IMG/VR virus record: IMGVR_UViG_3300046517_002304
Span: 447,234-511,233 of that record
Strand: one strand, 5' to 3'
Length of the DNA stretch: 64,000 nt
Positions within the stretch are counted from its first letter, which is position 1, and every line of letters begins with the position of its first letter. The notes under the pieces are model-generated. The model worked only from the letters and a program-made list of their open reading frames with translations, had not been told where the DNA came from and made no database searches. Shown one piece after another: positions 11,915 to 32,851 of this stretch. Made by a program: the position numbers and the translations under genes.

Positions 11915-14900
11915 TCAAGAACAGTCAGAAACCGCAAAAAATTGGGCCGTAACATCAGTCAAGGTATTGCAATTTACGCTTTGCGTTTTGGTAAAATCAC
12001 TAAGAAAAACAGGGTTGCTGTACATTTTTACGCTTGCGATGTTCGTTATTATACCAGCTTTTTTCAACTTTGAACAGACCTCTTCCAAAGAACGCGCCGG
12101 AATTGTCATGACTTGACGAGACAAGCAGGATGCAGTGCTGTCACTAAGCGGAGGGCATGTTTGAGTAGAACAATTTGTTTCCACAGTATAAAACATCATT
12201 GACCCTTGCCCAATGCTCCATGACAAAACAAGCGTCGTAGAAAGATTGGCGTTCACATTCCAGCTTATTGGAAGACTGATAACATACGTAACTTGTCCGC
12301 CGGTAGATCCGCCACCGAATATTAGGCCGCCGGTTCCAGTATATGAATGTGATAAAACAATACAATCGGCTTGTCCACCGAAGATAAGACCGCCAGTACC
12401 AAAATATATCCTTGTCTCAACATCAGCATCAGCGCTACCACTAAATATCAATCCGCCTGTTCCGATGTAAGAAAGTTGGAAGCTGGCATCACTACTACCA
12501 CTAAATATCAATCCGCCAGATGTGTTGATCCACGTAAGAATATGGTTCACTATTCCTGTACCGCCCAGCATAAGACCGCCAGAGCCGTCTACAACAAAGT
12601 TAGGAATATAATACCCTGATGGGAAAGACGCATGATAATCAAATGCAATTTCATCGGGATCTGAATAATCACTATAAACTATGACTTCATCAATTAAATT
12701 ATTAAACCGATTTCCGCTGCCTGTTGACGGACCATCAATATACCTTGTGCCATTATTCTTAGCACCAATACTAATCGCATCGTGCGACCCAACATTATCT
12801 GCAAGACCGCCATGAATGCCAAATAAAACGCCGTTCAAATACCCGGCGATAACATGTCCGGCAGCGTGGAACGATAATGCAGCATGATATCTTTGATGTG
12901 ATTGTAAAATTGGGGAACTAAAGACATAGTGGAATCCCCAAGCCGGACTGCCGGAATCAGCCGTCATGTTCCAAACAATCATGACAATTACATAAGAATC
13001 TAAATATATCCCAAACCCGCGAGTAATATCACCTTCTTCATAAAGAGTTCGGCGAGTAACAACATCGGCGCCGGTCCTAAACCAAAGTTCGATAGTTCTC
13101 TGAGTATATGGAGTACTGCTATTTATCGCGACATTATCCGGCGATAAAAGATAACTACTAGTTCCACCAAACAGAACAGAAGCATTACTAGGATCAGACA
13201 AAATTAAACTTGTCTGATTTAAAGTAAAGTCACCATGGTAAGTCCCATTCATCGCAGAACCAAGCGAGCCTGAGTTTACCGCAGTTGTCCCAGATGGATC
13301 GTCCAACCTATACCACACTAACGGATTTCTTGACGTAATAGCATTAGCAAATGACGGAAACGTGTTAAAGAATATCCCGCCAGATGGATAAAAATTCATT
13401 ACGGGATAAGAATGAGCGCTGCCCCCAAAATTTAAACCACCACTGCCAAAAAATGGCGTAATAACAAATCCGTTTGCGCCTATAAATGAATTGGCTCTTA
13501 TGGCACACGTAGCAATGTGATTTACCATCGGCATCGCACCAATACTGGCTACACAAAGTAATGGAGCTGCGGCAGGACCATAAACAAAACTAAAATTTAT
13601 CGGTTTGCTAGTTCTATTTATTAAATTAGGATATGACGCCAAGCTATTTGTATAGCTGGCAAGTACCGTGTTCGCTGGTAAAGCACGATTATAAATCCTA
13701 ACATCATCTAAGTACCCTGTAACAAATGATGTGATCTGGTTATAAGATCCGATAACCAAAGGTTGCCCGGAGTCAGATCCATGTGTACCAGTCCCGTCTG
13801 TCGCCCCGGAATAAGATACTTCCACACCATTATAATAAACATGAATATTAGATGCTGCGCTTCCCCCGCGCCATGTAACCACAACATGAGTCCAAGATCC
13901 AAACGGTGGAGGTGCACAACTTCTGGTGCAGTCTGTTCCATTAAATACAACAGCAACAAGTAGAGACGGAATGTTTACTTGGATGTATAGACCAGCGCTA
14001 GCGTTATTGTCGGTCTTATAAATAACCGTACCACTAGAAACTCCCATTATCCAAAAACTAACAGTAAATGGCCCAGTACCGATTAATTCATTGGGTGGAC
14101 CAACTGCCCCCTGTGATGCTCCTCCGAAAAATAAAATGCTACCAAAGCCACCCTTGCGGGATGTGGGGCGATACCCCCCAAGAAAACGTTGTTGCAGATT
14201 TGCAAATAATGCATGATGCTTGCCGACTATATCATACCAATATAAGCCTTGGCTGGTTACCGGCGATGCCAAATACCACGCAGTCAGCCCCTGCGCTAAC
14301 GGATGTTTAAAGTTAACTTGTCTGGCAAAGTTAGTGTTGTTAATCGTAATAGGAAAAGTGCGACTGGCGTTTTGCGCAAACCCGGCTCTTTGTAGAGTAT
14401 TGCCGCCTTCTACATGATCTACTCTTGCATTTAAAATAGCAGATGAACTATTGGCTACTCTGCATATCTGGCCCTCAATTATTACACAATCGCCTCTGCA
14501 TACAATATGAGTAGTTGCTATATGGGCCACTCTGGCGTTGGGCGTAGCGATATTAGAGACAACCGTTAAGTGAGCAGTGCCAACACGTTGACCGGGACTG
14601 AATGCTATAATTGTGGAATTACATATTACGGCACAGGCGCTCTTAATAGTATTCTTGGCCCGGGGATTTAGGCTAACGCTATTTAATACTACACATGTTG
14701 CTACGTGAGCCACTTTAGATCCAGCAGTGCCAATACTTGACGAACAAATAATAGATGTATTGTTGTTAGATGCTACGTGTCCGCTAGCCCCAATGAATGA
14801 ATTACAAACTATCGTCCAATTACCGGGGGCAACTATAGTATTAAAATTTATATATTTATTAGCCCTATTGATAAGTCCAGGGTATGATGTAATGCTATTC

Positions 14901-16852
14901 TGGTAAAGTAAGTTGGTTTCGCCACGAGATAGTTCTCGGTTATAGATCCTAATGTCGTCCATATAACCAGTTAAATTCTGAGTTGACTGGTTATACGAAC
15001 CTATAACTAACGGAGATCCAGCATCAGTTAATCGCGTTCCGTTTCCATCAGATGTAGTTTGATATGCTTGTTCTACACCATTATAATAAATGTGAATGCC
15101 AGAAGCTAAACTAGACCCATTCCATGTTAAAGTTATATGTACCCAAGCATTAACTGGAGGTACTGGAGAAGACCTGATACAATCATTGTTTTGAAAAGTA
15201 ATATTCAGCGCAAGTCCGCCGCTATTATAATCTATAAACCATCCCGATTGAACATCATTATCTGTTTTATACAAAAGAGTTGTGGCGGTTGATATTGAAA
15301 TATACGTCCAAAAACTAACCGTGAACGCACCGGTACCAGTTAAAGCAGTTCTAGGGCCAAGTATATAAGATGTTCTGCTGCCCGTAAAATGAAAACTACC
15401 AAAACCACCTCTGTGACTAAGGACATTAAATCCATCGCCTTGGGCAGCAAACATATTTGTCAACACACCATTATTACTGCGCGTAGTCAAATCATATACT
15501 ATGGTAGATCGACTCTTCTGCGGTAGAGCCATATACCACAAAACTAATCCCTTAGACAAACAATTACCGCTATTAACCGGATAGCTAAAATTAATATTAT
15601 TAGAATCAGTCGGAAAACTCTTTCTATACTTTTGAACAAACCCAGCATTTTGCGTAACTATTCTAAGTCCAGAAAAATGAGACACCCTACAATTAGGTGT
15701 AGATATACTGGAATTACAAATAACAGCGACGGAATCAATGTGGGCTACTTTAGCGCTAGCCCCAATGTTACTATTACATTTTACTGCACAAGTCGCAACA
15801 TGTGTAACTCTACAATTAGGCGTCGTAATGCTAGAGCTACACTTAACATCACAAATACCAAAAACAAAGTTTTGTAATGCAAAGTAAGGTATAAGAGAAG
15901 GCTGAGAATAAAGTTCGTCAGGGTACCGCCAAAGTTCAAAAACCTGTCCTGCCGTAAAAGGTTCGGCGTAAAGACGGAAGTCACGTATCGGTCCTACGAA
16001 GTCATGGCTTGCACTAGCTCCGCTAGTGGCAACCTGCCCACCGATGGTAATAGCCTGATTAGCACAAGATAATACTCCAGCAGCGTTTGCGCTGCTGGAG
16101 TTACTCGTAGCAATTAATTGTCCATTAATATAAAAAGACTGAGGTCGTGGTGATGGAAATCCTGTAAACTTACTTACAACACAAGCATGTATCCATTCGC
16201 CAGGATTATCATCAATCCTAATAACAAAGTCATTACCGGCATAAATGTTATCGATCCAGTGTAATTCACGAGTATGAGGATCGTACCAGAGGTACCATCC
16301 TTGAATTGTCGCTGGCCCACTATCATGAGGAACATGATTGCCAACAATAACATAGGTAAAACCAATAGAAGCTTGGTCCGGCGGTATCATAAACCAAATT
16401 GACATTGTCCAGCCGACTGATTCTGAATTTACAATTTGCGGAATAGAGCACTGGGTAGGTACAGTAATATAATTACTGACGGCGGTCATATTAAACACCA
16501 TACCGAAATATGTGTCATATATCCACTGACCAGTTAGATGACCTGTCAACGAGCCGTTAAAGTGGTTTGGTCCTACGTCCCTAACTGGCCAGCCGCCGGA
16601 AGTGCTGGTCCCGTTGGAATCTCCAGAACCATCGTTCAACGGCATGGCCAACACAAGTGTTGGCGTGAACTGTGAACTACCTTCGTTAATGCCAGGACAC
16701 CAGCGTCCTCCCCACTCTACGTTTGTAATACAAGGACGAACATCGGGGACTGAGCCAGAGAACGACTGGATAGAAACTAGCTGACCGTCCGTACTGGCCG
16801 TGAAAGTAGGATTAATAGTAGAAAATGTGGGCAAAGTACGGACTAGGGCCAT
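11915..16852 (-). CDS. Large virion protein with four LamG/ConA-like lectin domains and beta-repeats (tail fibre/adhesin-like)
   Basis: Repeated FTVSFW...W.H....W......Y.NG...G.DD.RIYNR LamG signatures; YxGxGGLIFxG repeats; TAAATA motif upstream. Confidence 0.85.
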   Translation of the reverse strand: MALVRTLPTFSTINPTFTASTDGQLVSIQSFSGSVPDVRPCITNVEWGGRWCPGINEGSSQFTPTLVLAMPLNDGSGDSNGTSTSGGWPVRDVGPNHFNGSLTGHLTGQWIYDTYFGMVFNMTAVSNYITVPTQCSIPQIVNSESVGWTMSIWFMIPPDQASIGFTYVIVGNHVPHDSGPATIQGWYLWYDPHTRELHWIDNIYAGNDFVIRIDDNPGEWIHACVVSKFTGFPSPRPQSFYINGQLIATSNSSSANAAGVLSCANQAITIGGQVATSGASASHDFVGPIRDFRLYAEPFTAGQVFELWRYPDELYSQPSLIPYFALQNFVFGICDVKCSSSITTPNCRVTHVATCAVKCNSNIGASAKVAHIDSVAVICNSSISTPNCRVSHFSGLRIVTQNAGFVQKYRKSFPTDSNNINFSYPVNSGNCLSKGLVLWYMALPQKSRSTIVYDLTTRSNNGVLTNMFAAQGDGFNVLSHRGGFGSFHFTGSRTSYILGPRTALTGTGAFTVSFWTYISISTATTLLYKTDNDVQSGWFIDYNSGGLALNITFQNNDCIRSSPVPPVNAWVHITLTWNGSSLASGIHIYYNGVEQAYQTTSDGNGTRLTDAGSPLVIGSYNQSTQNLTGYMDDIRIYNRELSRGETNLLYQNSITSYPGLINRANKYINFNTIVAPGNWTIVCNSFIGASGHVASNNNTSIICSSSIGTAGSKVAHVATCVVLNSVSLNPRAKNTIKSACAVICNSTIIAFSPGQRVGTAHLTVVSNIATPNARVAHIATTHIVCRGDCVIIEGQICRVANSSSAILNARVDHVEGGNTLQRAGFAQNASRTFPITINNTNFARQVNFKHPLAQGLTAWYLASPVTSQGLYWYDIVGKHHALFANLQQRFLGGYRPTSRKGGFGSILFFGGASQGAVGPPNELIGTGPFTVSFWIMGVSSGTVIYKTDNNASAGLYIQVNIPSLLVAVVFNGTDCTRSCAPPPFGSWTHVVVTWRGGSAASNIHVYYNGVEVSYSGATDGTGTHGSDSGQPLVIGSYNQITSFVTGYLDDVRIYNRALPANTVLASYTNSLASYPNLINRTSKPINFSFVYGPAAAPLLCVASIGAMPMVNHIATCAIRANSFIGANGFVITPFFGSGGLNFGGSAHSYPVMNFYPSGGIFFNTFPSFANAITSRNPLVWYRLDDPSGTTAVNSGSLGSAMNGTYHGDFTLNQTSLILSDPSNASVLFGGTSSYLLSPDNVAINSSTPYTQRTIELWFRTGADVVTRRTLYEEGDITRGFGIYLDSYVIVMIVWNMTADSGSPAWGFHYVFSSPILQSHQRYHAALSFHAAGHVIAGYLNGVLFGIHGGLADNVGSHDAISIGAKNNGTRYIDGPSTGSGNRFNNLIDEVIVYSDYSDPDEIAFDYHASFPSGYYIPNFVVDGSGGLMLGGTGIVNHILTWINTSGGLIFSGSSDASFQLSYIGTGGLIFSGSADADVETRIYFGTGGLIFGGQADCIVLSHSYTGTGGLIFGGGSTGGQVTYVISLPISWNVNANLSTTLVLSWSIGQGSMMFYTVETNCSTQTCPPLSDSTASCLSRQVMTIPARSLEEVCSKLKKAGIITNIASVKMYSNPVFLSDFTKTQSVNCNTLTDVTAQFFAVSDCS

Positions 16853-20276: not shown

Positions 20277-20493
20277 GAAATTTTTTCCAAGCATCTTGTC
20301 CGGGTCCGTATGGAGAACGATACCCGTCAGACATATGATGAGAGACTCCCTTAATTAATCCATCATGATTAGAGAGCTTGTCTGCCAACTTAGCAACAAC
20401 AAAATCAGACAAAGAAAACTGTGAAAAGCGAACGCAATATAGGATTACGGATAGAACTAAGATAACGGCTATTTTTTTAATCATACTTTTCAT
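20260..20493 (-). CDS. Small membrane-anchored protein
   Basis: N-terminal hydrophobic helix; ATGA overlap with dnaJ. Confidence 0.55.
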   Translation of the reverse strand: MKSMIKKIAVILVLSVILYCVRFSQFSLSDFVVAKLADKLSNHDGLIKGVSHHMSDGYRSPYGPGQDAWKKFLSEKK

Positions 20494-21551
20494 GCTCCAA
20501 TAGTAAATTCAGTAACACTTTCTCTGAATATATCTATTGTTTTGCACGATAAGTTATTATTCTGCGTTAAGAAATCCTTGTAATTATCATTTATCTCATC
20601 TGGCAAGCATAATTTAACCCTTACGATGAATTGGCCTGCATTACAATCACATATCACAAACTCTTTTCCATGCGAAGTAAAAGCAGGAATAGCCAAATTA
20701 TGTAATTTTCCGTTAATATGAGGAACGTCTATGCTGCCGCCCAACACAGCCAAATGATATGAAATCGGCAAATCGCAAATAACATTTTGTTCTTCTCTAT
20801 AAAAAAGCGGATGATTGGCAACATTAATAGTACAATATATGTCTCCATACTGACCATACGACCAACAGTTGCCAGCTCCAGCTAAGACAAACTGAGAATG
20901 ATTATTGGTTCCAGCCGGTATTTTAACCTGGAAAGTTTCAGTATTAGATTTCAGGCAACTTCCCGAACATGACTGACATTTCTCTTTAATTGTTCTTCTC
21001 GCGCCGCCACAAGCCGCGCAGGATGTAGATACTACAAACGGGCCTTGCCTGGTAGTAGACGAACCAGTGCCATTACAAACAATACATGTATTAAATGAAT
21101 TTCCTAAATGGGAACCATTCCCCTTACAATCTTGACAAGCATTATGTCTGTTGACTATGATATGCTTATCACAACCAAAAGTAGCTTCCAAAAAACTAAT
21201 TTCCATATCATATGCGATATGGGGATCTACATTATAAGTTTGTTGGCGATGATTATGGTTAAAGAATCCATTAAAGAATCCTCCAGCCATATCTGCGCCG
21301 AATGGATTACCGTATCCAGAAACACCATCTCTCTTATCCACGCGGCCATACATATCAAACTGACGCTTAGATTCAGCATCGCCTAATATGTCATATGCTT
21401 CACTCACATCCTTGAAATTATCGGAAGCACCGGTATCCTTATTGGAGTCGGGATGATATTTTTTAGCAAGCTTTTTATAAGCTTTTTTTATTTCGTCTGC
21501 CGATGCGTTCGGATCAACATCTAATACTTCATAAGGATTTAAATTAGGCAT
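20490..21551 (-). CDS. dnaJ: DnaJ chaperone
   Basis: J domain with HPD, G/F region, four CxxCxGx zinc repeats, C-terminal domain. Confidence 0.95.
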   Translation of the reverse strand: MPNLNPYEVLDVDPNASADEIKKAYKKLAKKYHPDSNKDTGASDNFKDVSEAYDILGDAESKRQFDMYGRVDKRDGVSGYGNPFGADMAGGFFNGFFNHNHRQQTYNVDPHIAYDMEISFLEATFGCDKHIIVNRHNACQDCKGNGSHLGNSFNTCIVCNGTGSSTTRQGPFVVSTSCAACGGARRTIKEKCQSCSGSCLKSNTETFQVKIPAGTNNHSQFVLAGAGNCWSYGQYGDIYCTINVANHPLFYREEQNVICDLPISYHLAVLGGSIDVPHINGKLHNLAIPAFTSHGKEFVICDCNAGQFIVRVKLCLPDEINDNYKDFLTQNNNLSCKTIDIFRESVTEFTIGA

Positions 21552-21572: not shown

Positions 21573-21875
21573 TTACTTCTTATCAAACGATATACCAACA
21601 AGATTGCCGTCATCTACGAAATCAATCGTAGTTCCCTTGACCTTTTCTTTGGACTCTTGGTCGCATATAAACTTTAATCCACCGTGCTCACAAACTAAAT
21701 CACCAGAATCCTTTTCCGATGTAATTTGAAACGTATACTGAAAATCATCATCGTCAGAAATAACGCCTATTCTAACAAAAATATCAGCCCCACCCTTTTT
21801 GGCATCTGCCCAAATTGGCGAAGAGTCAATAGCCTTTTTAATTTCCGTAGACGCCTTATCTGTAATCGTTAGCAT
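21573..21875 (-). CDS. HesB/IscA-like protein lacking canonical Cys motifs
   Basis: MLTITDKA...VRIGV...YTF...GTTIDFV scaffold; GGCSG replaced by DDDDF and no C-terminal CGCG. Confidence 0.7.
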   Translation of the reverse strand: MLTITDKASTEIKKAIDSSPIWADAKKGGADIFVRIGVISDDDDFQYTFQITSEKDSGDLVCEHGGLKFICDQESKEKVKGTTIDFVDDGNLVGISFDKK

Positions 21876-21900: not shown

Positions 21901-23115
21901 TCAGCACCAGTAGCACAAGAAGAAGCACTCACCGTTTCGTTCACCGAGAACGACAGGAGTTATAAATTCTGATTTAGTCAAATGCTGGTCAAGTGCAACA
22001 GAGGCAGGGTTAATTTCACTCTTTTCCTTGCTCTGGTGCCAATTTACCGCTACTTCTTTTCCGTCAATCATCAAGAGCCATTTTTCAGATTTTTTATCAT
22101 GACAAAACTCACGAGCATCAAGATGAAAGCTCGGACAAACAACCCAGTAATGATCAAAAATTGCTTTGCCGCCGGTCGCCGGGTAATGCTCAACTAACTT
22201 AAGAAGCTTCTCAACGCGAGGAGGCATAGGGGCATCAAAGGAATAAAGAGGATACTTATTAGGCTGATACTTTAAATTAGGTAAACCATAAGTATCAGCA
22301 ATTTTCCAGAAAGCCAATTTGGCAGGAACCAAATCTCTAGAAACCTGTATGCAACGAGCGCCACTTTCCCATCTGAGGCCCATAGATTTAGCTAAGATCA
22401 TTGCCGCGTCTACCATTTTTAATCTTACGAACCCATAATATTGTTCGGATACTCTTTTCTTTGTGTAATCCATTTTAGTAGAAATCGCTCTACTAAAGGC
22501 TGCTGCCTGCACATCATCAAATGCACTAAGCATTTTCTCTTGCGCGGCCAGTTCATCTACGTAATCATATCCACAATAATATGATTTAAAGGAATCAGGA
22601 TGTACAGAGCATGGAGTCGCTTCCAAAACTCCGGCAAACGGAATACTATTTGGCTTTTTGATCTGCCTGGCTTTAATCCGCTCTTTATCGCTCTTTAAAA
22701 TTCTAACTGGGGGACGAGAAATTTCGTGACAAAAGTTCTTAGAAACTTCTTTAAACTTAGTAAACTGACTACGAATTAATTCTGATAATTCAGCGGTATT
22801 GTGGTCCCTAATATAAGCCGCAGATCCAATGGCTTCGCAAATCAAGGAAAACTTCTTGCGAGTTATGCCATGCTGACTAATAAAAGTAGCTAAATGTGGG
22901 TGGTCAACATCCACTCTCTGACAGAATGAATTGATGCTTCTGCCAAACTTGCCCAAAACCAACTGGCAATCTTCTTCCTCTTGCCTAGCAATCCACTCCA
23001 TCTTGCCGCTAATTTCGCGGTCTATAACGGTAGTGTCGCCATGTTTATTCTTAGCAATCTTGCCAGCGTCGGCTAAAATTGCTTCCTGAAATTCATCAAC
23101 TTCTCTAACCGCCAT
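21901..23115 (-). CDS. Hypothetical protein
   Basis: 404-aa ORF. Confidence 0.65.
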   Translation of the reverse strand: MAVREVDEFQEAILADAGKIAKNKHGDTTVIDREISGKMEWIARQEEEDCQLVLGKFGRSINSFCQRVDVDHPHLATFISQHGITRKKFSLICEAIGSAAYIRDHNTAELSELIRSQFTKFKEVSKNFCHEISRPPVRILKSDKERIKARQIKKPNSIPFAGVLEATPCSVHPDSFKSYYCGYDYVDELAAQEKMLSAFDDVQAAAFSRAISTKMDYTKKRVSEQYYGFVRLKMVDAAMILAKSMGLRWESGARCIQVSRDLVPAKLAFWKIADTYGLPNLKYQPNKYPLYSFDAPMPPRVEKLLKLVEHYPATGGKAIFDHYWVVCPSFHLDAREFCHDKKSEKWLLMIDGKEVAVNWHQSKEKSEINPASVALDQHLTKSEFITPVVLGERNGECFFLCYWC

Positions 23116-23749
23116 TAGGCACCTTATTTTCGCTTGTTAAGGATTTAGGTGAGGGAGTAATCGCCTTCTTAGGCGAAAGTTTCGCTATAATAGAACGTTC
23201 ACTAAACGCAGGCTTACTCGTAACTTCAGATACATCAGAAACGGCAGCTATTACAGAATTAATAATTTCAAACCACCTGTCTTTATGTGGTTGTATTTTT
23301 CTCTTCTTGGCTCTGACCTTCAACTGAACATGAAAGCCTTTGGCAAGAAATTCTCTTAGTTTATTAATCTGAACATCTAAGTCATGTTGTTCAATATTAG
23401 GCGAAAACAATAACTCTTTTTCCGAAACAGAAACTTGACTTTTCCGTTTCTGCTTTTCCTTAAGACACTGTTCGTATTTAAACTTTCCATAATCTGCAAC
23501 AATGCATATTGATACATTATCCTGTTTCGTAATTTCAATTAAGTCCAATCCGAAACCTTTTGCATATGTCAAAGCATCTTGCTTTGACATAACGCCTATC
23601 TGCTCCCCGTCTTTAACAACACGGATCTTAAATGCGTAAATAGAATGGTTAATGTTGTTAGTCGCGTTTTTTGCAGAAAAATCTGAATTTCTCAAAGATT
23701 GTTCCTTAGAAGTACCCTTCTCGCTCAAGTTCCACGAACCTGAATTCAC
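23105..23749 (-). CDS. infC: Translation initiation factor IF-3
   Basis: IN..I...IRVV.DGEQIGVM, A...GLDLIEI, DYGKFKYE, KE..FSPNIEQHDLDV. True start is probably TTG at 23695. Confidence 0.92.
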   Translation of the reverse strand: MNSGSWNLSEKGTSKEQSLRNSDFSAKNATNNINHSIYAFKIRVVKDGEQIGVMSKQDALTYAKGFGLDLIEITKQDNVSICIVADYGKFKYEQCLKEKQKRKSQVSVSEKELLFSPNIEQHDLDVQINKLREFLAKGFHVQLKVRAKKRKIQPHKDRWFEIINSVIAAVSDVSEVTSKPAFSERSIIAKLSPKKAITPSPKSLTSENKVPNGG

Positions 23750-23993
23750 CAGAATTCATCATATCAGTAGCGATGGAAAGAGTCAATGCGGATTCTACGT
23801 AAATTTCAAAAATACCAGGCTGAAAAAAACTTCTAATAGTACAATTTGGAGCAAACGATTTTACTAAGTACGATCCATAATCTTGCTCCACTCCAAGCTT
23901 TGTGCAGACATAAAGCTTCCCTGGTCTAAACTTAACCTCGCGACCGTTCCAAGTAGTCGTTTCACTTTTTCTGAAAAAACCATCACTCTTCAT
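23706..23993 (-). CDS. Hypothetical protein
   Basis: 95-aa ORF in the operon. Confidence 0.6.
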   Translation of the reverse strand: MKSDGFFRKSETTTWNGREVKFRPGKLYVCTKLGVEQDYGSYLVKSFAPNCTIRSFFQPGIFEIYVESALTLSIATDMMNSGEFRFVELEREGYF

Positions 23994-24008: not shown

Positions 24009-25631
24009 TTAAATAATTTTTTGCAACTTAGATGTCATACGCTCTAGTGTAGCAGAACGATCTTTTTTGTCAAGAACAACATTGATAATATACAAATCTT
24101 TACTCAATAAAGCTTCAGAGAAGGCAGAGTCTAATTCTGTTTCGGTGTTAACAAGCCGCCCGACACCACGACCAATAATCTGAGGCAACAAGTGGTACTG
24201 CCAATTAGGAATATCGTTAAAACTACCGTCAATCAAAAATCGCTCTACCGTATAGCCGCCGTTATTCAGCACAACAATAATAGGATTTAGCTTATTGCTA
24301 GCTATCGTTGATATTTCCATTCCAGTCATCTGAAATGCTCCATCGCCAACCAATACAATCGGTCTAACATCCGGTTTAGCAATCTGAACACCCAGGGCAG
24401 CAGGAATAGAGAATCCCATGGATGTATAAAATGCCTGTGATAAAAAGTTGTTACTGTGATGAACAACTAGCTCATTAGAGCCGAATAAGCTGTCGCCTAT
24501 GTCTGCAATTATTGCCATATTCTTGTCTAAAACAGCATTAATTTTTTCAAATAATCTCTTGACCGTAATTTTCTCATTCTTAGGAGAAAAAACTGCTCTT
24601 GTCTTCATTTCGCCAACAATCGGAATTCGATCAGAAGAAATATTAGACTTAATTAACCCATTAACAAAATCTTGGAAAAGAACATTTTCATAGTAATGAT
24701 TTCGCACTCCCATTTTTTCAGTAGTGCAAAATATCGTTCTATCTTTACGAAGAACAGATGGCTTAAATCCAAAGTTAATGTCAGTAATCATCACGCCCAA
24801 CATAATTAAGCAATCTGATTCCTCAACCTTTTGCTTAACTTCTGGGCTACTAGCATCCCCACAATAAACACCTATAGATATCGGATGATTTTCATTTGTC
24901 AAACTCTTACTCAACATAGTTGTAGCAATGGGAATATTATACTTTCTAGCAAACTTGGTAATGACTTCGCCCATACCAAATCTAGCTAATTCAATGCCCG
25001 CCAAAATTACAGGGTTTTTACTTGAGTTGATCCAATTAATAGATTCCTGCAAAGCTTCCGCTAAATTTATCTTATCACTCTCTGTAGCTTTAGGAGAGCC
25101 GACCGTAAATGCATCATAGCTAATAGTTGTGTCCACCATATCTCTGGGGACTTCAATATAAACAGGTTGCTTATGCTGCTTCATGGCCAGAAGCACCCGA
25201 TCAATTTCATAAGCCGCCATTACCGGATTATCTAATACACAAGAAGCGCAGGTCACATGTTTAAAAATCTCAAACTGAGTATCATAAGAACCAACAGCAT
25301 GATGCAGCGTCATTCCGCCGGCTCTCTCCTTTTTCCCGGGAGAACCGCTAATAACAACAACCGGAGATTTTTCTGCGAAAGCGCCCCCGATAGAATTTAA
25401 TAGTTTAAACCCACCGACGCAATAAGTGGTGCATACACAGCCAATACCGTTAACTCTGGCATATGCGTCAGCGGCGAACCCAGCGCACTGTTCGTCAGTA
25501 GTGCCGATTACAGGAAGAGATTTAGAAAACTGATTATACAAATTAAGAACGAAATCGCCAGGAACTCCAAAAATATGCTTTACACCACACTCTTTAAGAC
25601 GAGAAATCAAAAATTGTGCAACTGTTGGCAT
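24009..25631 (-). CDS. TPP-dependent alpha-keto acid decarboxylase (indolepyruvate/pyruvate decarboxylase family)
   Basis: IFGVPGDF, E..AGFAADAYAR, LHH, GDGAFQMTGME...NNGGY TPP motif. Confidence 0.93.
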   Translation of the reverse strand: MPTVAQFLISRLKECGVKHIFGVPGDFVLNLYNQFSKSLPVIGTTDEQCAGFAADAYARVNGIGCVCTTYCVGGFKLLNSIGGAFAEKSPVVVISGSPGKKERAGGMTLHHAVGSYDTQFEIFKHVTCASCVLDNPVMAAYEIDRVLLAMKQHKQPVYIEVPRDMVDTTISYDAFTVGSPKATESDKINLAEALQESINWINSSKNPVILAGIELARFGMGEVITKFARKYNIPIATTMLSKSLTNENHPISIGVYCGDASSPEVKQKVEESDCLIMLGVMITDINFGFKPSVLRKDRTIFCTTEKMGVRNHYYENVLFQDFVNGLIKSNISSDRIPIVGEMKTRAVFSPKNEKITVKRLFEKINAVLDKNMAIIADIGDSLFGSNELVVHHSNNFLSQAFYTSMGFSIPAALGVQIAKPDVRPIVLVGDGAFQMTGMEISTIASNKLNPIIVVLNNGGYTVERFLIDGSFNDIPNWQYHLLPQIIGRGVGRLVNTETELDSAFSEALLSKDLYIINVVLDKKDRSATLERMTSKLQKII

Positions 25632-25642
25632 TATACTCTCTC

Positions 25643-26443
25643 CTATGTAAGAGATTCCGATGTTGGTGATTGTTGAACCTTGATGACAAAACTGCCATCT
25701 GTAGGAAACCTACGAACCCATTCCACGCCTTCGCCAATAAAACATCCATATTCACTAGGAGTAAAACTAGTAAAGCTTGGTGTTGAAATTGATAATGAAT
25801 TTACCATACTCATAGATGTCGTCATCTTTAATAACTTAAACTCAAAATTAAAACACCCAGGAACACAAGTATCATTAGAGAGCCATTCATAAACAAGTTG
25901 GCTTTTAGTTAAAACATTAGTAGAAACTGTTCCATCAACCTGAAGCTGATCTTCGTAAGTTAACTCCGTCTGAGCAACAGAATTCAAAACCCTAAATATT
26001 TTTAAACAAGTGCCCTTTTTATAATCGCCAACTGGTGTACCATTATACCCTCTAAGAACTTGCACCAACTTAAGATTTTCGTCAAACCCAGTAATTAGCA
26101 TCTGCTCTGGATTACGAACTCTACTCACAACTATAATATCGCCAACCAACGCCTGCTGAAAACCAATACCGTCTGCTAAAGCAAAATAAGTGTCTGTAGA
26201 CGTAATAGCTGATTTAAGCTTCGCATTCGCCCACATACTCGCTTCTAATACAAGTCCAGTTAAATCTATCGGACCATTACAATCTGAAATAGCAACTTTA
26301 AACGGAGGCTTGGTGTCATGCTGTTTGATCTGGAAATCTGGGCAACTTCCATCACAATTAAACTCATCGGGACACCCGCCATTACAATTAGTTGAACTAG
26401 CAAAACTGTTTAAATTACTTGAATTACTTTGAGAGCATGTCAT
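25643..26443 (-). CDS. BppU-like (baseplate upper/adaptor) virion protein
   Basis: IKQHDTKP...DCNGPIDLTG and YEW...DT..PG.F.FEF bracket a BppU-type Ig fold with an insertion; late-type motif upstream. Confidence 0.5.
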   Translation of the reverse strand: MTCSQSNSSNLNSFASSTNCNGGCPDEFNCDGSCPDFQIKQHDTKPPFKVAISDCNGPIDLTGLVLEASMWANAKLKSAITSTDTYFALADGIGFQQALVGDIIVVSRVRNPEQMLITGFDENLKLVQVLRGYNGTPVGDYKKGTCLKIFRVLNSVAQTELTYEDQLQVDGTVSTNVLTKSQLVYEWLSNDTCVPGCFNFEFKLLKMTTSMSMVNSLSISTPSFTSFTPSEYGCFIGEGVEWVRRFPTDGSFVIKVQQSPTSESLT

Positions 26444-26466
26444 ACCATTATATATCTTGCACTAAA

Positions 26467-27012
26467 TCAAGAAAATAATTCTGGCACTTGCAACTCCATA
26501 ATCCCTATCTTATCTTTAACCCAATGAAGGTTGCCGCCATATCTCTCTATTTTAACGCTATGATAAGATTTGCTTAAAAACTCAAAAGTTTTTTTATAGT
26601 CTTTAGGCAGACCATAAGGCTTTTTAGGTGCATATACAATCCGCCGAATGCCACGATCAAGTATGTTTACCACCGAGTCAGGATGAGGAATAGTAGTAAT
26701 ATACAAACTAAACGCAAAAAAATTAGTTTCCTTATCAGAAAGCGCTCTTAAAACCTTGATTTCAGCAGGAACGATAAAATCATAAATTTTTGGATTGTCC
26801 CAAGACAATTTAAACGGATTGGCAGCATAAGTTGGGACATCACCTATCGGATAGGTGAAAGCCATAGCTCTTATTTCTTCCTTATCCGCTAAAACAGCTC
26901 CAGACTGGCAATAAGGATCTACCGATGCCCATGACGCAATTACAGCGTGCATCATCATCCGATGATCTAATGCGACAATATCCCTGGCATTCTTTTCCTG
27001 AAACTGAAACAT
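26467..27012 (-). CDS. dCMP deaminase-like protein, zinc ligands altered
   Basis: S.DP..Q.GAVL, PAE (for HAE), LYITTIPHPDS (for PCxxC), GIRRIVY. Confidence 0.7.
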   Translation of the reverse strand: MFQFQEKNARDIVALDHRMMMHAVIASWASVDPYCQSGAVLADKEEIRAMAFTYPIGDVPTYAANPFKLSWDNPKIYDFIVPAEIKVLRALSDKETNFFAFSLYITTIPHPDSVVNILDRGIRRIVYAPKKPYGLPKDYKKTFEFLSKSYHSVKIERYGGNLHWVKDKIGIMELQVPELFS

Positions 27013-28178
27013 TATTCCGTCTTCAGCAGGTAAGACTTAGTTTCTTCCGTAAGCTCTTTAAGCCACTTAACATAGGGCGTTCCACCAGTACCGGTAGGAT
27101 TATCACACTTTTTCTGGATATAGTCAACAGCATACCCAAAGTGAATTTCCCGAAATCGGCATAACTGAAGAATGATGTTATTATAAGTAGCTCTTACATA
27201 CTTGTCAAGTTTATTATTAATAATTCCATCTCTGATATTAACCGATGATCCTTCAAGGTGCGAAACAAACCCACGGTGATTCCTGGGCATATACTTTCTC
27301 ATATCATCAAGATGATGAGTCAAAATAGACTGCTGATGCTTAACTCCGAAAGCTGCCAATACAGCAGGAACAATAGAACTTTGAGCACCCGTTTCGCCTC
27401 TAAAAGACTGCTCTTTTGCACCACTAAAGAACGAACAGCTCGGAACATTTTCATACACTACATTTTCAAAACCAAAAATATAAGGTCTAACCTTACGGAA
27501 ATAAACATCTGGGCTACACTTTTCTGGCATCCTTTCTAAAACCGTATTAATCCCTTTAAAAGAACTGCATATAACCTCTAGATTCTCGGCAAAGAAATCA
27601 TCATTTGGCGCTTTACCGCTATCAAGAAACTCCGTTAAATTATAAATGCTTTTCAGCAATCTCCCTGCCCTAGCTTCAATTTCAACATGAACTAGAATAA
27701 ACCAATCTTCATCATAAATATTATTAAATTTTTGAATTAACTGAATATTACCAAGCGATATATCAGAATTCTTATCGATTCTCTTCCAGTTGTTCAATGC
27801 ATAATCAGCATACGACAAAATCGGCGGTCTACCAACAATCTCTGACAAAGCACAAAGAGGACGAGCAATCGCACTAGGGATATGCTTAACAACTCCAGCT
27901 TGGCCGTGCACATAAGCAGATGCAAAATAAGCATAAATCATCCTAAGTCGGTTTAAAACACCGCGCTCTTTATGCTCTTTAAGAGCCGAATAAGAGATAT
28001 CGTATATCGGCAAGGTGTCTAGGGTAATTCTTACCTTACTGGACTGAACATGAGAAGGTAATTCATAGGCCACCTTATCCAAATAACTAAACCCAGAACC
28101 ACTGGGCAATCGCTCAATCGGGTCTGGGCTAGCAAGAAATCCTCTGTCTTCATGAACGGTGGGATAAAATTCAGTCAT
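27012..28178 (-). CDS. Indoleamine 2,3-dioxygenase family heme enzyme
   Basis: RPPILSYADY.L.NW, DEDWFILVHVEIE, FRGETGAQSS, MRKYMP..HR, FR..H...A..YI, GTGGT. Confidence 0.92.
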   Translation of the reverse strand: MTEFYPTVHEDRGFLASPDPIERLPSGSGFSYLDKVAYELPSHVQSSKVRITLDTLPIYDISYSALKEHKERGVLNRLRMIYAYFASAYVHGQAGVVKHIPSAIARPLCALSEIVGRPPILSYADYALNNWKRIDKNSDISLGNIQLIQKFNNIYDEDWFILVHVEIEARAGRLLKSIYNLTEFLDSGKAPNDDFFAENLEVICSSFKGINTVLERMPEKCSPDVYFRKVRPYIFGFENVVYENVPSCSFFSGAKEQSFRGETGAQSSIVPAVLAAFGVKHQQSILTHHLDDMRKYMPRNHRGFVSHLEGSSVNIRDGIINNKLDKYVRATYNNIILQLCRFREIHFGYAVDYIQKKCDNPTGTGGTPYVKWLKELTEETKSYLLKTE

Positions 28179-28567: not shown

Positions 28568-29127
28568 GCATAGTGGGTGCCCTTTTTACAAATAAGATTG
28601 ATGCTGTTCGGGTTCTTATTAGAAATAAACCAACTACATTCTTCAAGACTACAATTTCGGTGCTTTCCTGTTGATACTTGAATTTTTTCTTTTATCCTAC
28701 TAACCTGTTCTGGATATTTCTCCAACGCATCGCAATAATCAATACGCTTGTCAAAAGCGAACAACTTTTGTTCACTGAATAATCTAATTTTGGCTGAATG
28801 TAAATCGCTAAGAACTTCAAAGTCACAATTCAATTTAGCACTCTTCATAATTCTATCTAAATACTCAATTTTGTCAATAGCTTTATAGAAAAACGTGGCG
28901 TACGTTGTTTCACCAGTAAAATCTCTAAAACAAGTCAGCAATTCGTACTTTTGATTTTTATAATCACTGTAAAATGGCTGCAATAGGCATAAAAAAACCA
29001 AAATGCGCGATTCTTTCTCGCCTAAATAAATCTCCATCCACTTTTTATCTTCGGGCAGGAAGTCATAATGAAGTGAGTTTTTGGAGTAAATTCTTAAAAA
29101 TACTAAGTCTTTTTCACTAACACGCAT
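28540..29127 (-). CDS. Hypothetical protein
   Basis: 195-aa ORF. Confidence 0.55.
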   Translation of the reverse strand: MRVSEKDLVFLRIYSKNSLHYDFLPEDKKWMEIYLGEKESRILVFLCLLQPFYSDYKNQKYELLTCFRDFTGETTYATFFYKAIDKIEYLDRIMKSAKLNCDFEVLSDLHSAKIRLFSEQKLFAFDKRIDYCDALEKYPEQVSRIKEKIQVSTGKHRNCSLEECSWFISNKNPNSINLICKKGTHYAWSEKVKCQ

Positions 29128-29653
29128 CGGCCAGTTCTGGTGTTTTCTTTGTTTCTTTAACCTTAACCATTAATGCAGTCCAATCTAACGGAATTCCAAC
29201 AACAACATCCAAATAAATCAAAAGTATTCCGCCGATTCTATTTTGAGGAATCCGCTTTGCCTCACATTCCAGCATCAATTTACGAAGGAGTACCATATCA
29301 TAGTATTTCCCATCACTAAAAAGCTCTCCACACAGCCTAAAATCAGGATTTTTATCAGCCATCAACTTAATGGCCTCATAAAACAAATCCACGGCCGTCA
29401 CAAACTCAATCTGTTCAATAATATCAATTTTTTCTTGGGAAATCAACGCTCGCTGCGGAATAGCTCCGCCGCAATGCCATTTACGCCCTTCAAAAAAGTG
29501 CAAAATACATTCCTTCGCATGTTCATCAATTTCCGCCATTAAGTCAATTACGTTTTGCTCAGCGTCTGTCCATTCATCATCAAAATCGTCATAATCGTCG
29601 TCGTTAAAAACAGGGCTTTCGGAAATCGGCATTTTGTTCTCCGTGATGTTCAA
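29117..29653 (-). CDS. Hypothetical protein with acidic N-terminus
   Basis: 178-aa ORF. Confidence 0.55.
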   Translation of the reverse strand: MNITENKMPISESPVFNDDDYDDFDDEWTDAEQNVIDLMAEIDEHAKECILHFFEGRKWHCGGAIPQRALISQEKIDIIEQIEFVTAVDLFYEAIKLMADKNPDFRLCGELFSDGKYYDMVLLRKLMLECEAKRIPQNRIGGILLIYLDVVVGIPLDWTALMVKVKETKKTPELADAC

Positions 29654-32353: not shown

Positions 32354-32851
32354 TTAATTCCTTGCTTTTGCAGGGGAACCAATTTTGTCAATTGTAATTC
32401 CAAAACTATGATCAATCTCATGGGCATAAACAGCCGCAAAATCTGAGACTACCATATCAACATCTTTCAACACAATTTCATTTTTAGCAATAATTTGCTT
32501 ACCAATCACTCGGATGCTTTTATGACGAGAAACGACGTAAAACTTCAAGTTACCACTGGCATCTTTCAAAGATAAACATCCTTCATAAGATTCATACACT
32601 TCTTCGCCCACTGGCTCGTACCTACAGTTTACCCAATGCGAAAAGCCATGTAAATAGTTTTCTGAAGAAAGACTGTTTTTTATCACAAAAAGATTAAGCG
32701 GAATGCCAACTTGTGTTGCGGATAATCCAACGCCCTGCTCTTTTACGCACAAAACACTTAGCGCTGTAGCCAGCTTAAAAGCATCAACCAACTTGGTTTC
32801 ATCAACAGCTTCAGCTAACGGAATTTTATCAGGAGCAACCAGCTTATACAT
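32354..32851 (-). CDS. def: Peptide deformylase
   Basis: GVGLSATQVG, EGCLS, HEIDH motifs. Confidence 0.93.
   Translation of the reverse strand: MYKLVAPDKIPLAEAVDETKLVDAFKLATALSVLCVKEQGVGLSATQVGIPLNLFVIKNSLSSENYLHGFSHWVNCRYEPVGEEVYESYEGCLSLKDASGNLKFYVVSRHKSIRVIGKQIIAKNEIVLKDVDMVVSDFAAVYAHEIDHSFGITIDKIGSPAKARN

What the first reader, a model, noticed from the sequence alone, without database searches (positions are those of the whole stretch)
24009..28178. Phage-borne tryptophan-catabolism pair: IDO-family dioxygenase plus indolepyruvate-decarboxylase-like enzyme
Seen: an apparently intact IDO (27012..28178) and a TPP alpha-keto acid decarboxylase (24009..25631) lie co-oriented ~1.4 kb apart, among virion and translation genes. 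Known: IDO converts Trp to N-formylkynurenine, the entry to the kynurenine route to NAD+; IpdC decarboxylates indole-3-pyruvate on the auxin route. Neither is a commonly described phage auxiliary gene. Inference: the phage redirects Trp or aromatic metabolism, perhaps feeding NAD+ synthesis against NAD-depleting defences, making indole signals, or draining Trp. The substrate of the decarboxylase cannot be read from sequence.
Basis: partly seen in the sequence, partly recalled or inferred. Interest (0 to 1): 0.72.

Follow-up and report, generated by a model that had tools for sequence, protein, structure and literature searches.

The report
Huge-phage IDO beside keto-acid decarboxylase
A 511-kb soil phage carries an intact tryptophan-opening haem dioxygenase (IDO) and a thiamine-dependent 2-keto-acid decarboxylase, but relatives show the decarboxylase is a core gene of this huge-phage clade while the IDO is an optional single-gene extra, so they are neighbours rather than a proven pathway pair.

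Summary
ORF 27012..28178(-) is an intact IDO-family haem dioxygenase. ORF 24009..25631(-) is an intact PDC/KdcA/PPDC-type TPP 2-keto-acid decarboxylase. Both lie in a complete 511,233-bp phage genome from soil and rhizosphere metagenomes.

The "pair" reading is only partly right. The decarboxylase sits in a conserved co-directional block: deaminase-fold protein, 266-aa protein, decarboxylase, IF3, about 400-aa protein, (IscA, ALDH), DnaJ. This block occurs in every relative examined, including a published 595-kb huge phage.

An aldehyde dehydrogenase accompanies the block in 14 of 25 IMG/VR records. In this genome it lies about 45 kb away.

IDO is present in only 4 of 25 records and is absent from a complete 572-kb relative. 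When present it always occupies one fixed site upstream of the block, and no other gene is specific to IDO-carrying loci. In 80 bacterial loci, IDO homologues have no decarboxylase neighbour of this kind.

The phage encodes no kynureninase, cyclase-type formamidase, aminotransferase (classes I/II, IV, V) or DAO-type FAD oxidoreductase. It does encode a NAMPT salvage enzyme, so the NAD+ de novo idea is unsupported.

Most likely these are two independent auxiliary enzymes. Decarboxylase plus ALDH would form an Ehrlich-type route from host 2-keto acids to acids. IDO would be an accessory Trp-to-N-formylkynurenine step. Substrates remain unproven. I found no phage IDO in the literature searched or in the reference phage collections.

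The parts
27012..28178 (-). IDO-family haem dioxygenase, 388 aa. It is an accessory gene found in a subset of the clade.
   Evidence: PF01231 at E 9e-71. The proximal His (H346), the carboxylate-binding Arg (R231) and the GTGGT loop are invariant in 35 homologues. His164 sits at the human IDO1 Ser167 position. Present in 4 of 25 related IMG/VR records.
26467..27012 (-). 181-aa protein with a cytidine/dCMP-deaminase fold and non-canonical motifs: PAE in place of HAE, and PHPD in place of PCxxC. It belongs to the conserved block.
   Evidence: ESM Atlas feature score 0.93 and structure TM 0.74 to dCMP deaminases. The L002 homologue matches PF00383 at E 3e-4. Motifs were read from the alignment. 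Present in both IDO-plus and IDO-minus loci.
25643..26443 (-). 266-aa phage-only protein with a Cys-rich N-terminus and a beta-rich fold. It always lies directly upstream of the decarboxylase.
   Evidence: Present in 26 of 26 related IMG/VR loci and in LR756511.1. No Pfam match. Weak hit to phrog_1101, a tail protein family, at E 7e-4. The AF2 model is poor, pLDDT 53.
24009..25631 (-). TPP-dependent non-oxidative 2-keto-acid decarboxylase of the PDC/KdcA/PPDC family, 540 aa. It is a core gene of the clade.
   Evidence: Family assignment. Catalytic residues D26, E47, H110, H111 and E463 are conserved in 118-120 of 120 homologues. Pocket residues are L382, I285, V462 and L466.
23706..23993 (-). 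95-aa hypothetical protein between the decarboxylase and IF3.
   Evidence: ORF. No family match. Homologues found in L002 and L117 only.
23105..23749 (-). Translation initiation factor IF-3 homologue.
   Evidence: TIGR00168 infC at 129 bits against a cut-off of 60. Follows the decarboxylase in 24 of 26 loci.
21901..23115 (-). 404-aa conserved protein of unknown fold. In relatives it lies between IF3 and ALDH.
   Evidence: Present in 22 of 26 loci. AF2 pLDDT 66, with no informative fold match.
21573..21875 (-). IscA/HesB-like Fe-S cluster assembly protein.
   Evidence: PF01521 at E 8.5e-9.
20490..21551 (-). DnaJ co-chaperone homologue, at the end of the conserved block.
   Evidence: PF00226, PF01556 and PF00684. 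TIGR02349 at 284 bits, below its cut-off. Present in most relatives.
29117..29653 (-). 178-aa conserved hypothetical protein. It marks the upstream edge of the site where IDO is present or absent.
   Evidence: The family is found in 9 of 9 IDO-plus loci and 15 of 16 IDO-minus loci. The order pdf, hyp178, [IDO], deaminase-fold gene, 266-aa gene, TPP is shown.
32354..32851 (-). Peptide deformylase homologue, a syntenic upstream marker.
   Evidence: PF01327 at E 9e-19. Synteny shown.

Best explanation
The two genes are separate auxiliary metabolic enzymes. They lie in one long co-directional block of host-takeover genes that also holds peptide deformylase, IF3, an IscA-like protein, DnaJ and PhoH. 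The block belongs to a clade of huge phages from soil and other environmental metagenomes.

Shown:
- The decarboxylase is a core gene of the clade. It is always preceded by the same 266-aa protein and usually followed by IF3.
- It retains every catalytic residue of non-oxidative TPP 2-keto-acid decarboxylases.
- It has a medium-sized hydrophobic substrate pocket.
- Roughly half of the related IMG/VR records (14 of 25), and this genome, also encode an aldehyde dehydrogenase.

Inferred:
- Decarboxylase plus ALDH form an Ehrlich-type two-step route. Host transaminases would supply aromatic or branched-chain 2-keto acids, such as indolepyruvate, phenylpyruvate or keto-isovalerate.
- The phage would convert these to the aldehyde and then to the acid (IAA, phenylacetate or branched acids), yielding CO2 and NAD(P)H.

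Shown for IDO:
- It is an accessory single gene at a fixed site upstream of this block.
- It has been inherited alongside the block in some lineages and is missing in others.
- Its haem and substrate-binding residues are intact.

Inferred for IDO:
- It opens the indole ring of L-Trp, or a related indole, with O2 to give N-formylkynurenine.
- It acts on its own with host enzymes.
- It does not feed a phage-encoded kynurenine-to-NAD+ route.
For: Gene identity and intactness.

Phage genome and habitat: complete phage genome, from soil and rhizosphere metagenomes.

Conserved block:
- Seen in the independent assemblies L002, L008, L009 and L010.
- Seen in 26 IMG/VR loci: the 266-aa gene in 26 of 26, IF3 in 24 of 26, the 404-aa gene in 22 of 26.
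- Seen in GenBank LR756511.1, 595 kb.

ALDH:
- In this genome at C1:424986-426323, 434 bits.
- Two to four genes downstream of the decarboxylase in relatives.
- In 14 of 25 related records, including all 4 IDO-plus records.

IDO distribution:
- Present in only 4 of 25 records. Absent from the complete 572-kb genome and the 97%-complete 430-kb genome.
- Fixed insertion site between the hyp178 family gene and the block.
- No other gene family is exclusive to IDO-plus loci.
- IDO and decarboxylase pairwise identities correlate across nine phages, Spearman 0.69.
- IDO-plus phages fall in three decarboxylase subclades, each with IDO-minus sisters.

Bacterial IDO homologues: no close decarboxylase neighbour in 80 loci and no conserved neighbour at all.

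Missing pathway genes in the phage: no aminotransferase of class I/II, IV or V, no DAO, no cyclase-type formamidase and no kynureninase.

NAD salvage: a NAMPT gene is present.
Against: - No enzyme assay, expression data or host identification exists. No RNA run was listed.
- The decarboxylase misses the cut-offs of both indolepyruvate-decarboxylase equivalogs. It is about equally distant from KdcA/KivD and PPDC, so the substrate class is inferred only from pocket residues.
- The ALDH matches no equivalog. Its best partial hits are to acidic semialdehyde dehydrogenases.
- In this genome the ALDH is about 45 kb from the decarboxylase. The complete 572-kb relative has no ALDH, so the two-step route is not universal.
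- Every IDO-plus record seen also has ALDH (4 of 4). IDO also always sits within 0.5-9 kb of the block. A functional link in those lineages is therefore not excluded.
- Most IMG/VR relatives are fragments, so the absences outside the two near-complete genomes are weak.
Confidence: 0.5

Rival explanations
1. One coupled tryptophan pathway. In IDO-carrying phages, IDO, a host transaminase, the decarboxylase and the ALDH would act in series on Trp-derived metabolites to make one small-molecule product. For example, the keto acid of kynurenine could be decarboxylated and oxidised to a 2-aminobenzoyl-acetate or quinolone-type compound.
For: - IDO lies 0.5-9 kb upstream of the decarboxylase, in the same orientation, in every IDO-plus phage.
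- In this window and in L001/L002 it abuts the block, and its stop overlaps the next start.
- All 4 IDO-plus IMG/VR records, plus this genome and L008-L010, also have ALDH.
- The two genes appear to have been co-inherited.
Against: - The decarboxylase block persists without IDO in most relatives, including a complete genome.
- No gene is specific to IDO-plus loci.
- There is no phage formamidase or aminotransferase.
- The association of IDO with ALDH is not significant (4/4 versus 10/21; my hypergeometric estimate is p about 0.08), and the records are not phylogenetically independent.
- From general chemistry, the keto acid of kynurenine cyclises spontaneously to kynurenic acid.
Confidence: 0.15
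2. NAD+ supply. IDO would start the kynurenine route to quinolinate and NAD+ in order to counter NAD-depleting defences.
For: IDO is the first enzyme of that route in organisms that have it (established knowledge). Phages are known to rebuild NAD+, and this phage invests in NAD metabolism through a NAMPT gene.
Against: - There is no kynureninase and no cyclase-type kynurenine formamidase in the complete phage genome.
- Five bacterial genomes that carry homologues of this IDO also lack a kynureninase above the family cut-off.
- The phage already has a one-step salvage enzyme.
- The CTP_transf_like hit in the window is an HldE-like heptose enzyme, not an NMNAT.
- I did not search for KMO, HAAO or QPRT.
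Confidence: 0.05
3. Central-carbon bypass. The decarboxylase plus ALDH would act on pyruvate or 2-oxoglutarate. This would be a PDH-bypass or a cyanobacterial-type 2-OG decarboxylase/SSADH shunt that keeps energy and NAD(P)H flowing during infection. IDO would be unrelated.
For: - The best partial NCBIfam hits of the ALDH are alpha-ketoglutaric, succinate and succinylglutamate semialdehyde dehydrogenases.
- The decarboxylase is core to the clade and is embedded among general takeover genes.
Against: - The pocket position that is Trp392 in Zymomonas PDC (residue numbering recalled, not tested here) is Leu in 109 of 120 homologues. The other pocket residues are hydrophobic, with no conserved basic residue at the positions examined.
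- PDCs score lower (224-244 bits) than KdcA and PPDC (293-300 bits).
Confidence: 0.12
4. Hitch-hiking or decaying cargo. One or both genes would be recent, functionless captures from a host.
For: IDO is patchy across the clade.
Against: - Both ORFs are intact, with catalytic residues conserved across homologues that are only 43-64% identical.
- Phage IDOs and decarboxylases have diverged in parallel.
- The closest homologues of both genes are other phages of the clade, not a particular bacterium.
Confidence: 0.03

Closest known systems
Indoleamine 2,3-dioxygenase family (Pfam PF01231; human IDO1/IDO2; bacterial IDO homologues)
   Same: - Full-length single-domain match of 239 bits.
- Proximal haem His, Arg231 equivalent and GTGGT loop are all conserved.
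- About 40-48% identical to stand-alone IDO genes in Chloroflexota, Planctomycetota, Acidobacteriota, Pseudomonadota and other phyla.
   Different: - It is encoded by a phage.
- His replaces the human IDO1 Ser167 position. This His is invariant in the clade and in the aligned bacterial homologues.
- Only about 27% identical to human IDO1, by my reading of the alignment.
- No downstream kynurenine-pathway genes are encoded.
Lactococcus KdcA/KivD branched-chain keto-acid decarboxylases and Azospirillum PPDC (PDB 2vbf, 6vgs, 9msa, 2nxw)
   Same: - Same three-domain architecture and about the same length.
- Conserved Asp/Glu/His-His/Glu catalytic set and GDG...NN TPP motif.
- These are the best solved-structure matches, at 293-300 bits.
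   Different: - Below the cut-off of the PPDC/IPDC equivalog TIGR03394 (387 versus 554 bits) and of the IpdC equivalog TIGR03393 (305 versus 946 bits).
- Mixed features: it has the KdcA/PDC-type GYTVE motif but PPDC-like ADIGD and AEKSPVVVISG segments.
- Its nearest cellular clusters are archaeal, from Nitrososphaeraceae (50% identity) and Methanoregula (44%), and are uncharacterised.
Indole-3-pyruvate route to auxin in rhizobacteria (aminotransferase, IpdC/PPDC, aldehyde dehydrogenase)
   Same: - A decarboxylase of the right superfamily plus an NAD(P)-type ALDH are encoded.
- The phage comes from soil and rhizosphere samples.
   Different: - No phage aminotransferase is encoded.
- The substrate is unproven.
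- Relatives' records carry lake and other environmental sample names (for example L023 and L031).
- In this genome the ALDH is unlinked, about 45 kb away.
Uncultured huge phage LR756511.1 (595 kb, GenBank) and related IMG/VR huge-phage records
   Same: It has the same block of 266-aa protein, decarboxylase, IF3, about 400-aa protein, IscA-like protein and ALDH.
   Different: It has no IDO. The record is unannotated, and the huge-phage papers I searched do not mention these genes.

Membership tests
IDO family (PF01231) | Full-length match to the family profile above the gathering score | tested here: met
   239 bits against a cut-off of 26, covering residues 7-359.
IDO family (PF01231) | Proximal haem-ligand His (human IDO1 His346) | tested here: met
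   His346 of the query aligns with it. It is invariant in 35 homologues.
IDO family (PF01231) | Substrate carboxylate-binding Arg (human Arg231) and the GTGGT loop | tested here: met
   R231 and T364-G-G-T367 are invariant.
IDO family (PF01231) | Dioxygenase activity on L-Trp | not testable with these tools
   This needs haem reconstitution and an enzyme assay. The distal-pocket position is His rather than the Ser of human IDO1.
Indolepyruvate decarboxylase equivalogs (TIGR03393, TIGR03394) | Score above NCBIfam's curated equivalog cut-off | tested here: not met
   TIGR03394 scores 387.3 against 554.5. TIGR03393 scores 305.2 against 946.
Non-oxidative TPP 2-keto-acid decarboxylases (PDC/IPDC/KdcA/PPDC group) | N-terminal, middle and C-terminal TPP-enzyme domains in one chain of about 540-570 aa | tested here: met
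   PF02776, PF00205 and PF02775 all match.
Non-oxidative TPP 2-keto-acid decarboxylases (PDC/IPDC/KdcA/PPDC group) | Catalytic Asp, cofactor-activating Glu, His-His pair, second catalytic Glu, and the GDG...NN motif | tested here: met
   D26, E47, H110, H111 and E463 are present, as are G429-D-G and N456-N. They are conserved in 118-120 of 120 homologues.
Non-oxidative TPP 2-keto-acid decarboxylases (PDC/IPDC/KdcA/PPDC group) | Substrate preference (pyruvate, branched-chain or aromatic keto acids) | tested here: inconclusive
   The pocket residues L382, I285, V462 and L466 suggest a medium-to-large hydrophobic substrate. There is no assay.
Kynurenine pathway module (Trp to NAD+ or anthranilate) | Kynurenine formamidase and kynureninase encoded with the dioxygenase | tested here: not met
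   No PF04199 and no TIGR01814 match in the complete genome. I did not search for KMO, HAAO or QPRT.
Indole-3-pyruvate auxin route | Aminotransferase, indolepyruvate decarboxylase and aldehyde dehydrogenase | tested here: inconclusive
   ALDH is present. The decarboxylase is of the right superfamily but below the equivalog cut-offs. No phage aminotransferase was found, so a host enzyme would be needed.

The most novel reading that the evidence does not exclude
In the IDO-carrying lineages, IDO, the decarboxylase and the ALDH would together form a phage-specific route from tryptophan to a diffusible aromatic signal or antimicrobial. Candidates are an auxin or phenylacetate-type acid, or a kynurenine-derived aminobenzoyl or quinolone-type compound. 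Infected soil or rhizosphere bacteria would then alter their neighbours or plant roots. This would be the first case of a phage-encoded tryptophan-to-signal pathway.
Probability: 0.1. Interest if true: 0.85.

Novelty: new member of a known kind. Interest (0 to 1): 0.55.

Why it matters
- Phage auxiliary metabolic genes are well known, but a haem IDO has no PHROG family. It has no tblastn match in about 50,000 GenBank phage records, and I found no mention of one in the literature searched.
- A 2-keto-acid decarboxylase that is a core gene of a whole clade of 340-600-kb phages, often with an aldehyde dehydrogenase, is likewise undescribed.
- If active, these enzymes mean that huge soil phages rewire aromatic or branched amino-acid catabolism in infected cells. 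Possible products such as IAA, phenylacetate and kynurenines are biologically active in soil and the rhizosphere.
- The presence/absence of IDO at one fixed site gives a natural experiment for testing its contribution.
- For annotation, the finding warns against reading adjacency inside a conserved huge-phage block as an operon-level pathway.

Tried and rejected
- A single-protein IDO scan of IMG/VR and DNA and protein searches of GenBank phages found nothing. An alignment-based scan was needed.
- NMNAT lead: the PF01467 hit at window 62765..63928 is an HldE-like heptose kinase/adenylyltransferase, so I dropped it.
- Structure of the conserved 404-aa protein: pLDDT 66. The only match in AFDB clusters was to an uncharacterised protein, and PDB gave nothing.
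- Structure of the 266-aa protein: pLDDT 53, too poor to search. The Atlas gave only weak beta-sandwich or tail-like leads.
- Complex prediction of the decarboxylase with the 266-aa protein gave no answer (score 0.00). This is not evidence either way.
- ALDH subtype: no NCBIfam equivalog was reached.
- Promoter and terminator scan: counts are not clearly above shuffles (42 versus 34 ± 5, and 13 versus 7.7 ± 3.4). I therefore make no operon-boundary claim.
- Expression: no RNA run was listed, so I did not use read laying.
- IDO phylogeny: the phage sequences form three groups inside a clade that also holds bacterial groups. The deep nodes are unresolved, so I claim neither a donor nor a direction of transfer.
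- I did not attempt host identification, so the host remains unknown.
- I could not place characterised IpdC, PDC and KdcA sequences in a tree, because their sequences are not held as references. I relied on PDB and NCBIfam scores and on printed alignments.

Full report
**1. The observation**

The window is the last 64 kb of a single-contig genome of 511,233 bp. IMG/VR classes it as a virus with direct terminal repeats, and CheckV estimates it as 100% complete. Its GC content is about 0.39 and it carries four tRNA genes. The same sequence occurs in several soil and rhizosphere metagenome runs.

- The 388-aa product of 27012..28178 matches Pfam IDO at E 9e-71 over nearly the whole profile. It aligns with human IDO1 and IDO2 structures.
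- The 540-aa product of 24009..25631 has the three TPP-enzyme domains.
- Its best NCBIfam match is the Azospirillum-type indolepyruvate/phenylpyruvate decarboxylase model. The score of 387 bits is well under that model's cut-off of 554. The Enterobacter-type IpdC model scores 305 against 946.
- Among solved structures it is about equally close to Lactococcus KivD/KdcA (295-300 bits) and Azospirillum PPDC (293 bits). It is further from pyruvate decarboxylases (224-244 bits) and Enterobacter IpdC (238 bits).

**2. Are the enzymes intact?**

For the IDO, an alignment of 35 homologues shows several invariant residues:

- the proximal haem histidine (query H346);
- the arginine that binds the substrate carboxylate in human IDO1 (R231);
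- the GTGGT loop.

The position of human Ser167 is an invariant histidine (H164).

For the decarboxylase, the catalytic Asp26, the cofactor-activating Glu47, the His110-His111 pair and Glu463 are conserved in 118-120 of 120 homologues. The GDG...NN TPP motif is also present.

Some residues align with the pocket positions I recall as size-determining in Zymomonas PDC and KdcA. In the query these are Leu382, Ile285, Val462 and Leu466. They are hydrophobic and mid-sized. This argues against a dedicated pyruvate enzyme and gives no sign of a site for a second carboxylate. This is an inference from alignment, not a measured specificity.

**3. What lies between and around the two genes**

The 1.4-kb gap holds two ORFs.

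- The 181-aa protein has a cytidine/dCMP-deaminase fold (Atlas feature score 0.93, structure TM 0.74). Its zinc-binding motifs are replaced: PAE for HAE, and PHPD for PCxxC. These replacements are conserved in its homologues.
- The 266-aa protein is phage-only, Cys-rich at the N-terminus and beta-rich. It has only a weak tail-protein PHROG hit.

Downstream, on the same strand with small gaps or overlaps, come:

- a 95-aa ORF;
- IF3;
- a conserved 404-aa protein of unknown fold;
- an IscA/HesB-like protein;
- DnaJ.

A GT2 glycosyltransferase and PhoH follow further downstream on the same strand. A peptide deformylase lies upstream of IDO.

**4. Relatives: the decisive evidence**

The nearest IDO homologues are 47-64% identical and the nearest decarboxylase homologues are 55-80% identical. 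Several sit on the same metagenomic contigs.

Contexts fetched from four independent assemblies show the same order: IDO..., deaminase-fold gene, about 266-aa gene, decarboxylase, IF3, about 400-aa gene, (RpiB), aldehyde dehydrogenase..., DnaJ. Ribosomal protein S21, peptide deformylase, PhoH and a sigma factor lie nearby.

A decarboxylase-alignment scan of IMG/VR returned 26 loci from contigs of 31-572 kb. Counts of block genes at those loci:

| Gene | Loci |
|---|---|
| 266-aa gene directly upstream of the decarboxylase | 26 of 26 |
| IF3 | 24 of 26 |
| About 400-aa gene | 22 of 26 |
| ALDH within 10 kb | 13 of 26 |
| IDO within 10 kb | 5 of 26 |

Whole-record searches gave these results.

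- IDO is in 4 of 25 records. It is absent from a complete 572-kb genome and a 97%-complete 430-kb genome.
- ALDH is in 14 of 25 records, including all four IDO-plus ones. It is absent from the 572-kb genome.
- GenBank's 595-kb uncultured huge phage LR756511.1 carries the block with ALDH. No GenBank phage record has an IDO match.

This genome also has an ALDH (434 bits to PF00171). It lies at C1:424986-426323, about 45 kb from the decarboxylase.

**5. IDO is a presence/absence gene at a fixed site**

The order is the same in IDO-plus and IDO-minus genomes: peptide deformylase, hyp178 family gene, [IDO]..., deaminase-fold gene, 266-aa gene, decarboxylase.

I clustered all ORFs from 9 IDO-plus and 16 IDO-minus loci. 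IDO itself is the only real gene family exclusive to IDO-plus loci. The only other exclusive family is an antisense ORF artefact inside IDO.

On a decarboxylase tree, the IDO-plus phages fall in three subclades, each with IDO-minus sisters. IDO and decarboxylase pairwise identities across nine phages correlate, with Spearman 0.69. These pairs are not independent.

This pattern fits long co-residence with repeated loss. A few transfers within the clade would also fit. It does not fit recent capture.

The IDO tree places the phage sequences in three groups within a well-supported clade. That clade also contains Planctomycetota, CPR and other bacterial groups. The deep nodes are unresolved, so I claim no donor.

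**6. Bacterial comparison**

GTDB representative genomes hold at least 586 loci with homologues of this IDO.

- In the 80 best loci, none has a close decarboxylase homologue within 10 kb. One locus has a 30%-identical TPP enzyme.
- No neighbouring gene family recurs in more than 7 of the 80 loci.
- Five of these genomes have no kynureninase above the family cut-off.

This IDO clade therefore behaves as a stand-alone gene in bacteria too.

The nearest non-phage clusters of the decarboxylase are stand-alone genes in genuine archaeal contexts. These are from Nitrososphaeraceae (50% identity) and Methanoregula (44%), and both are uncharacterised.

**7. Pathway completeness in the phage**

The complete genome has no match to any of these:

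- class I/II, IV or V aminotransferases;
- DAO-type FAD oxidoreductases;
- the cyclase-type kynurenine formamidase;
- kynureninase.

It does encode a NAMPT, with NAMPT_N plus NAPRTase domains. The apparent NMNAT hit in the window is an HldE-like heptose enzyme.

So any 2-keto acid must come from host transaminases, and nothing downstream of N-formylkynurenine is phage-encoded. The NAD+ de novo idea has no support beyond the presence of IDO itself.

**8. Interpretation**

What is shown is the anatomy:

- a conserved huge-phage block in which the decarboxylase is core;
- an ALDH that is a frequent companion;
- an IDO that is an optional single gene.

What is inferred is the chemistry.

- Decarboxylase plus ALDH would convert host-made aromatic or branched 2-keto acids to aldehydes and then to acids, yielding NAD(P)H.
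- IDO would independently oxidise Trp or another indole.

I put about 0.5 on this independent-enzymes reading. The rivals are:

| Rival | Confidence |
|---|---|
| Real three-enzyme Trp pathway in the IDO-plus lineages | about 0.15 |
| Pyruvate or 2-oxoglutarate bypass role for decarboxylase plus ALDH | about 0.12 |
| NAD+ supply | about 0.05 |
| Functionless cargo | about 0.03 |

The soil and rhizosphere origin makes auxin- or phenylacetate-type products attractive. Against that, some relatives' records carry lake sample names, and the substrate is unproven.

**9. Novelty**

Both enzymes are ordinary members of known superfamilies. What is new is their setting.

- IDO has no PHROG family and no match in GenBank phages.
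- The decarboxylase and ALDH fall in PHROGs of unknown function.
- Literature searches found no description of phage IDO or of a phage keto-acid decarboxylase/ALDH module. These included full-text checks of two huge-phage papers, PMC7162821 and PMC11748809.
- The only hit was one EC-table line for indolepyruvate decarboxylase in a virome survey, PMC6008428.

I rate this as new members of a known kind, namely phage auxiliary metabolic genes. Interest is moderate, and would be higher if the enzymes prove to make a signalling molecule.

Noticed in passing
window 26467..27012 (-); homologues L001:2583-3050 and L002:3993-4520: The deaminase-fold protein has its zinc-ligand motifs replaced: HAE becomes PAE or RAE, and PCxxC becomes PHP[DE]. 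The catalytic-type Glu and the new PHP motif are invariant in the three aligned homologues. It may be a pseudo-enzyme or a deaminase-fold protein with new chemistry.
   Followed up: partly
window 25643..26443 (-): The 266-aa Cys-rich, beta-rich protein lies directly upstream of the decarboxylase in 26 of 26 related phage loci. Its function is unknown, and the complex prediction with the decarboxylase gave no answer.
   Followed up: partly
window 38006..40456 (+) and 51084..52418 (-): Two separate ORFs on opposite strands match different parts of the same DNA polymerase PHROG, phrog_405 (profile positions 441-1045 and 42-439). The polymerase appears to be split and rearranged.
   Followed up: no
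genome C1:375752-376600 (L005:1438-2883:-), outside the window: A 481-aa NAMPT (NAMPT_N plus NAPRTase domains). This is a nicotinamide salvage enzyme of the kind phages use to rebuild NAD+. I found no NMNAT partner.
   Followed up: partly
window 62765..63928 (-): An HldE-like bifunctional heptose-7-phosphate kinase / heptose-1-phosphate adenylyltransferase (186 bits, below the equivalog cut-off). This points to phage-encoded sugar-nucleotide synthesis.
   Followed up: no
window 27208..27180 (-), inside the 3' end of the IDO ORF: A perfect sigma-70 consensus (TTGACA, 17 nt, TATAAT) lies about 170 bp upstream of the deaminase-fold gene. It could be an internal promoter for the block downstream of IDO. 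The overall promoter count is not clearly above shuffles.
   Followed up: no
L004, L023 and L031 (Planctomycetota/Gemmataceae contigs): On the IDO tree, these bacterial IDOs sit next to one of the phage IDO groups (L017/L018) at 85% SH-aLRT support, which is unstarred. L004 is a genuine bacterial contig with ribosomal protein genes. This may reflect phage-bacterium exchange or be a hint about the host.
   Followed up: no
L151 (Nitrososphaeraceae MAG) and L153/L154 (Methanoregula-like): The nearest cellular relatives of the phage decarboxylase, at 44-50% identity, are stand-alone archaeal genes of unknown function.
   Followed up: partly
window 11915..16852 (-) and the GC-richer stretches 12-18 kb and 56-62 kb: A 1,645-aa ORF with only a weak PHROG hit. 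GC is locally elevated (0.41-0.46 against about 0.37). The 56-62 kb stretch coincides with plus-strand genes that match unknown-function PHROGs.
   Followed up: no
L150 (GenBank LR756511.1:316583-338208): A published 595-kb huge phage record carries the same decarboxylase/IF3/ALDH block. The record has no annotation at all.
   Followed up: yes
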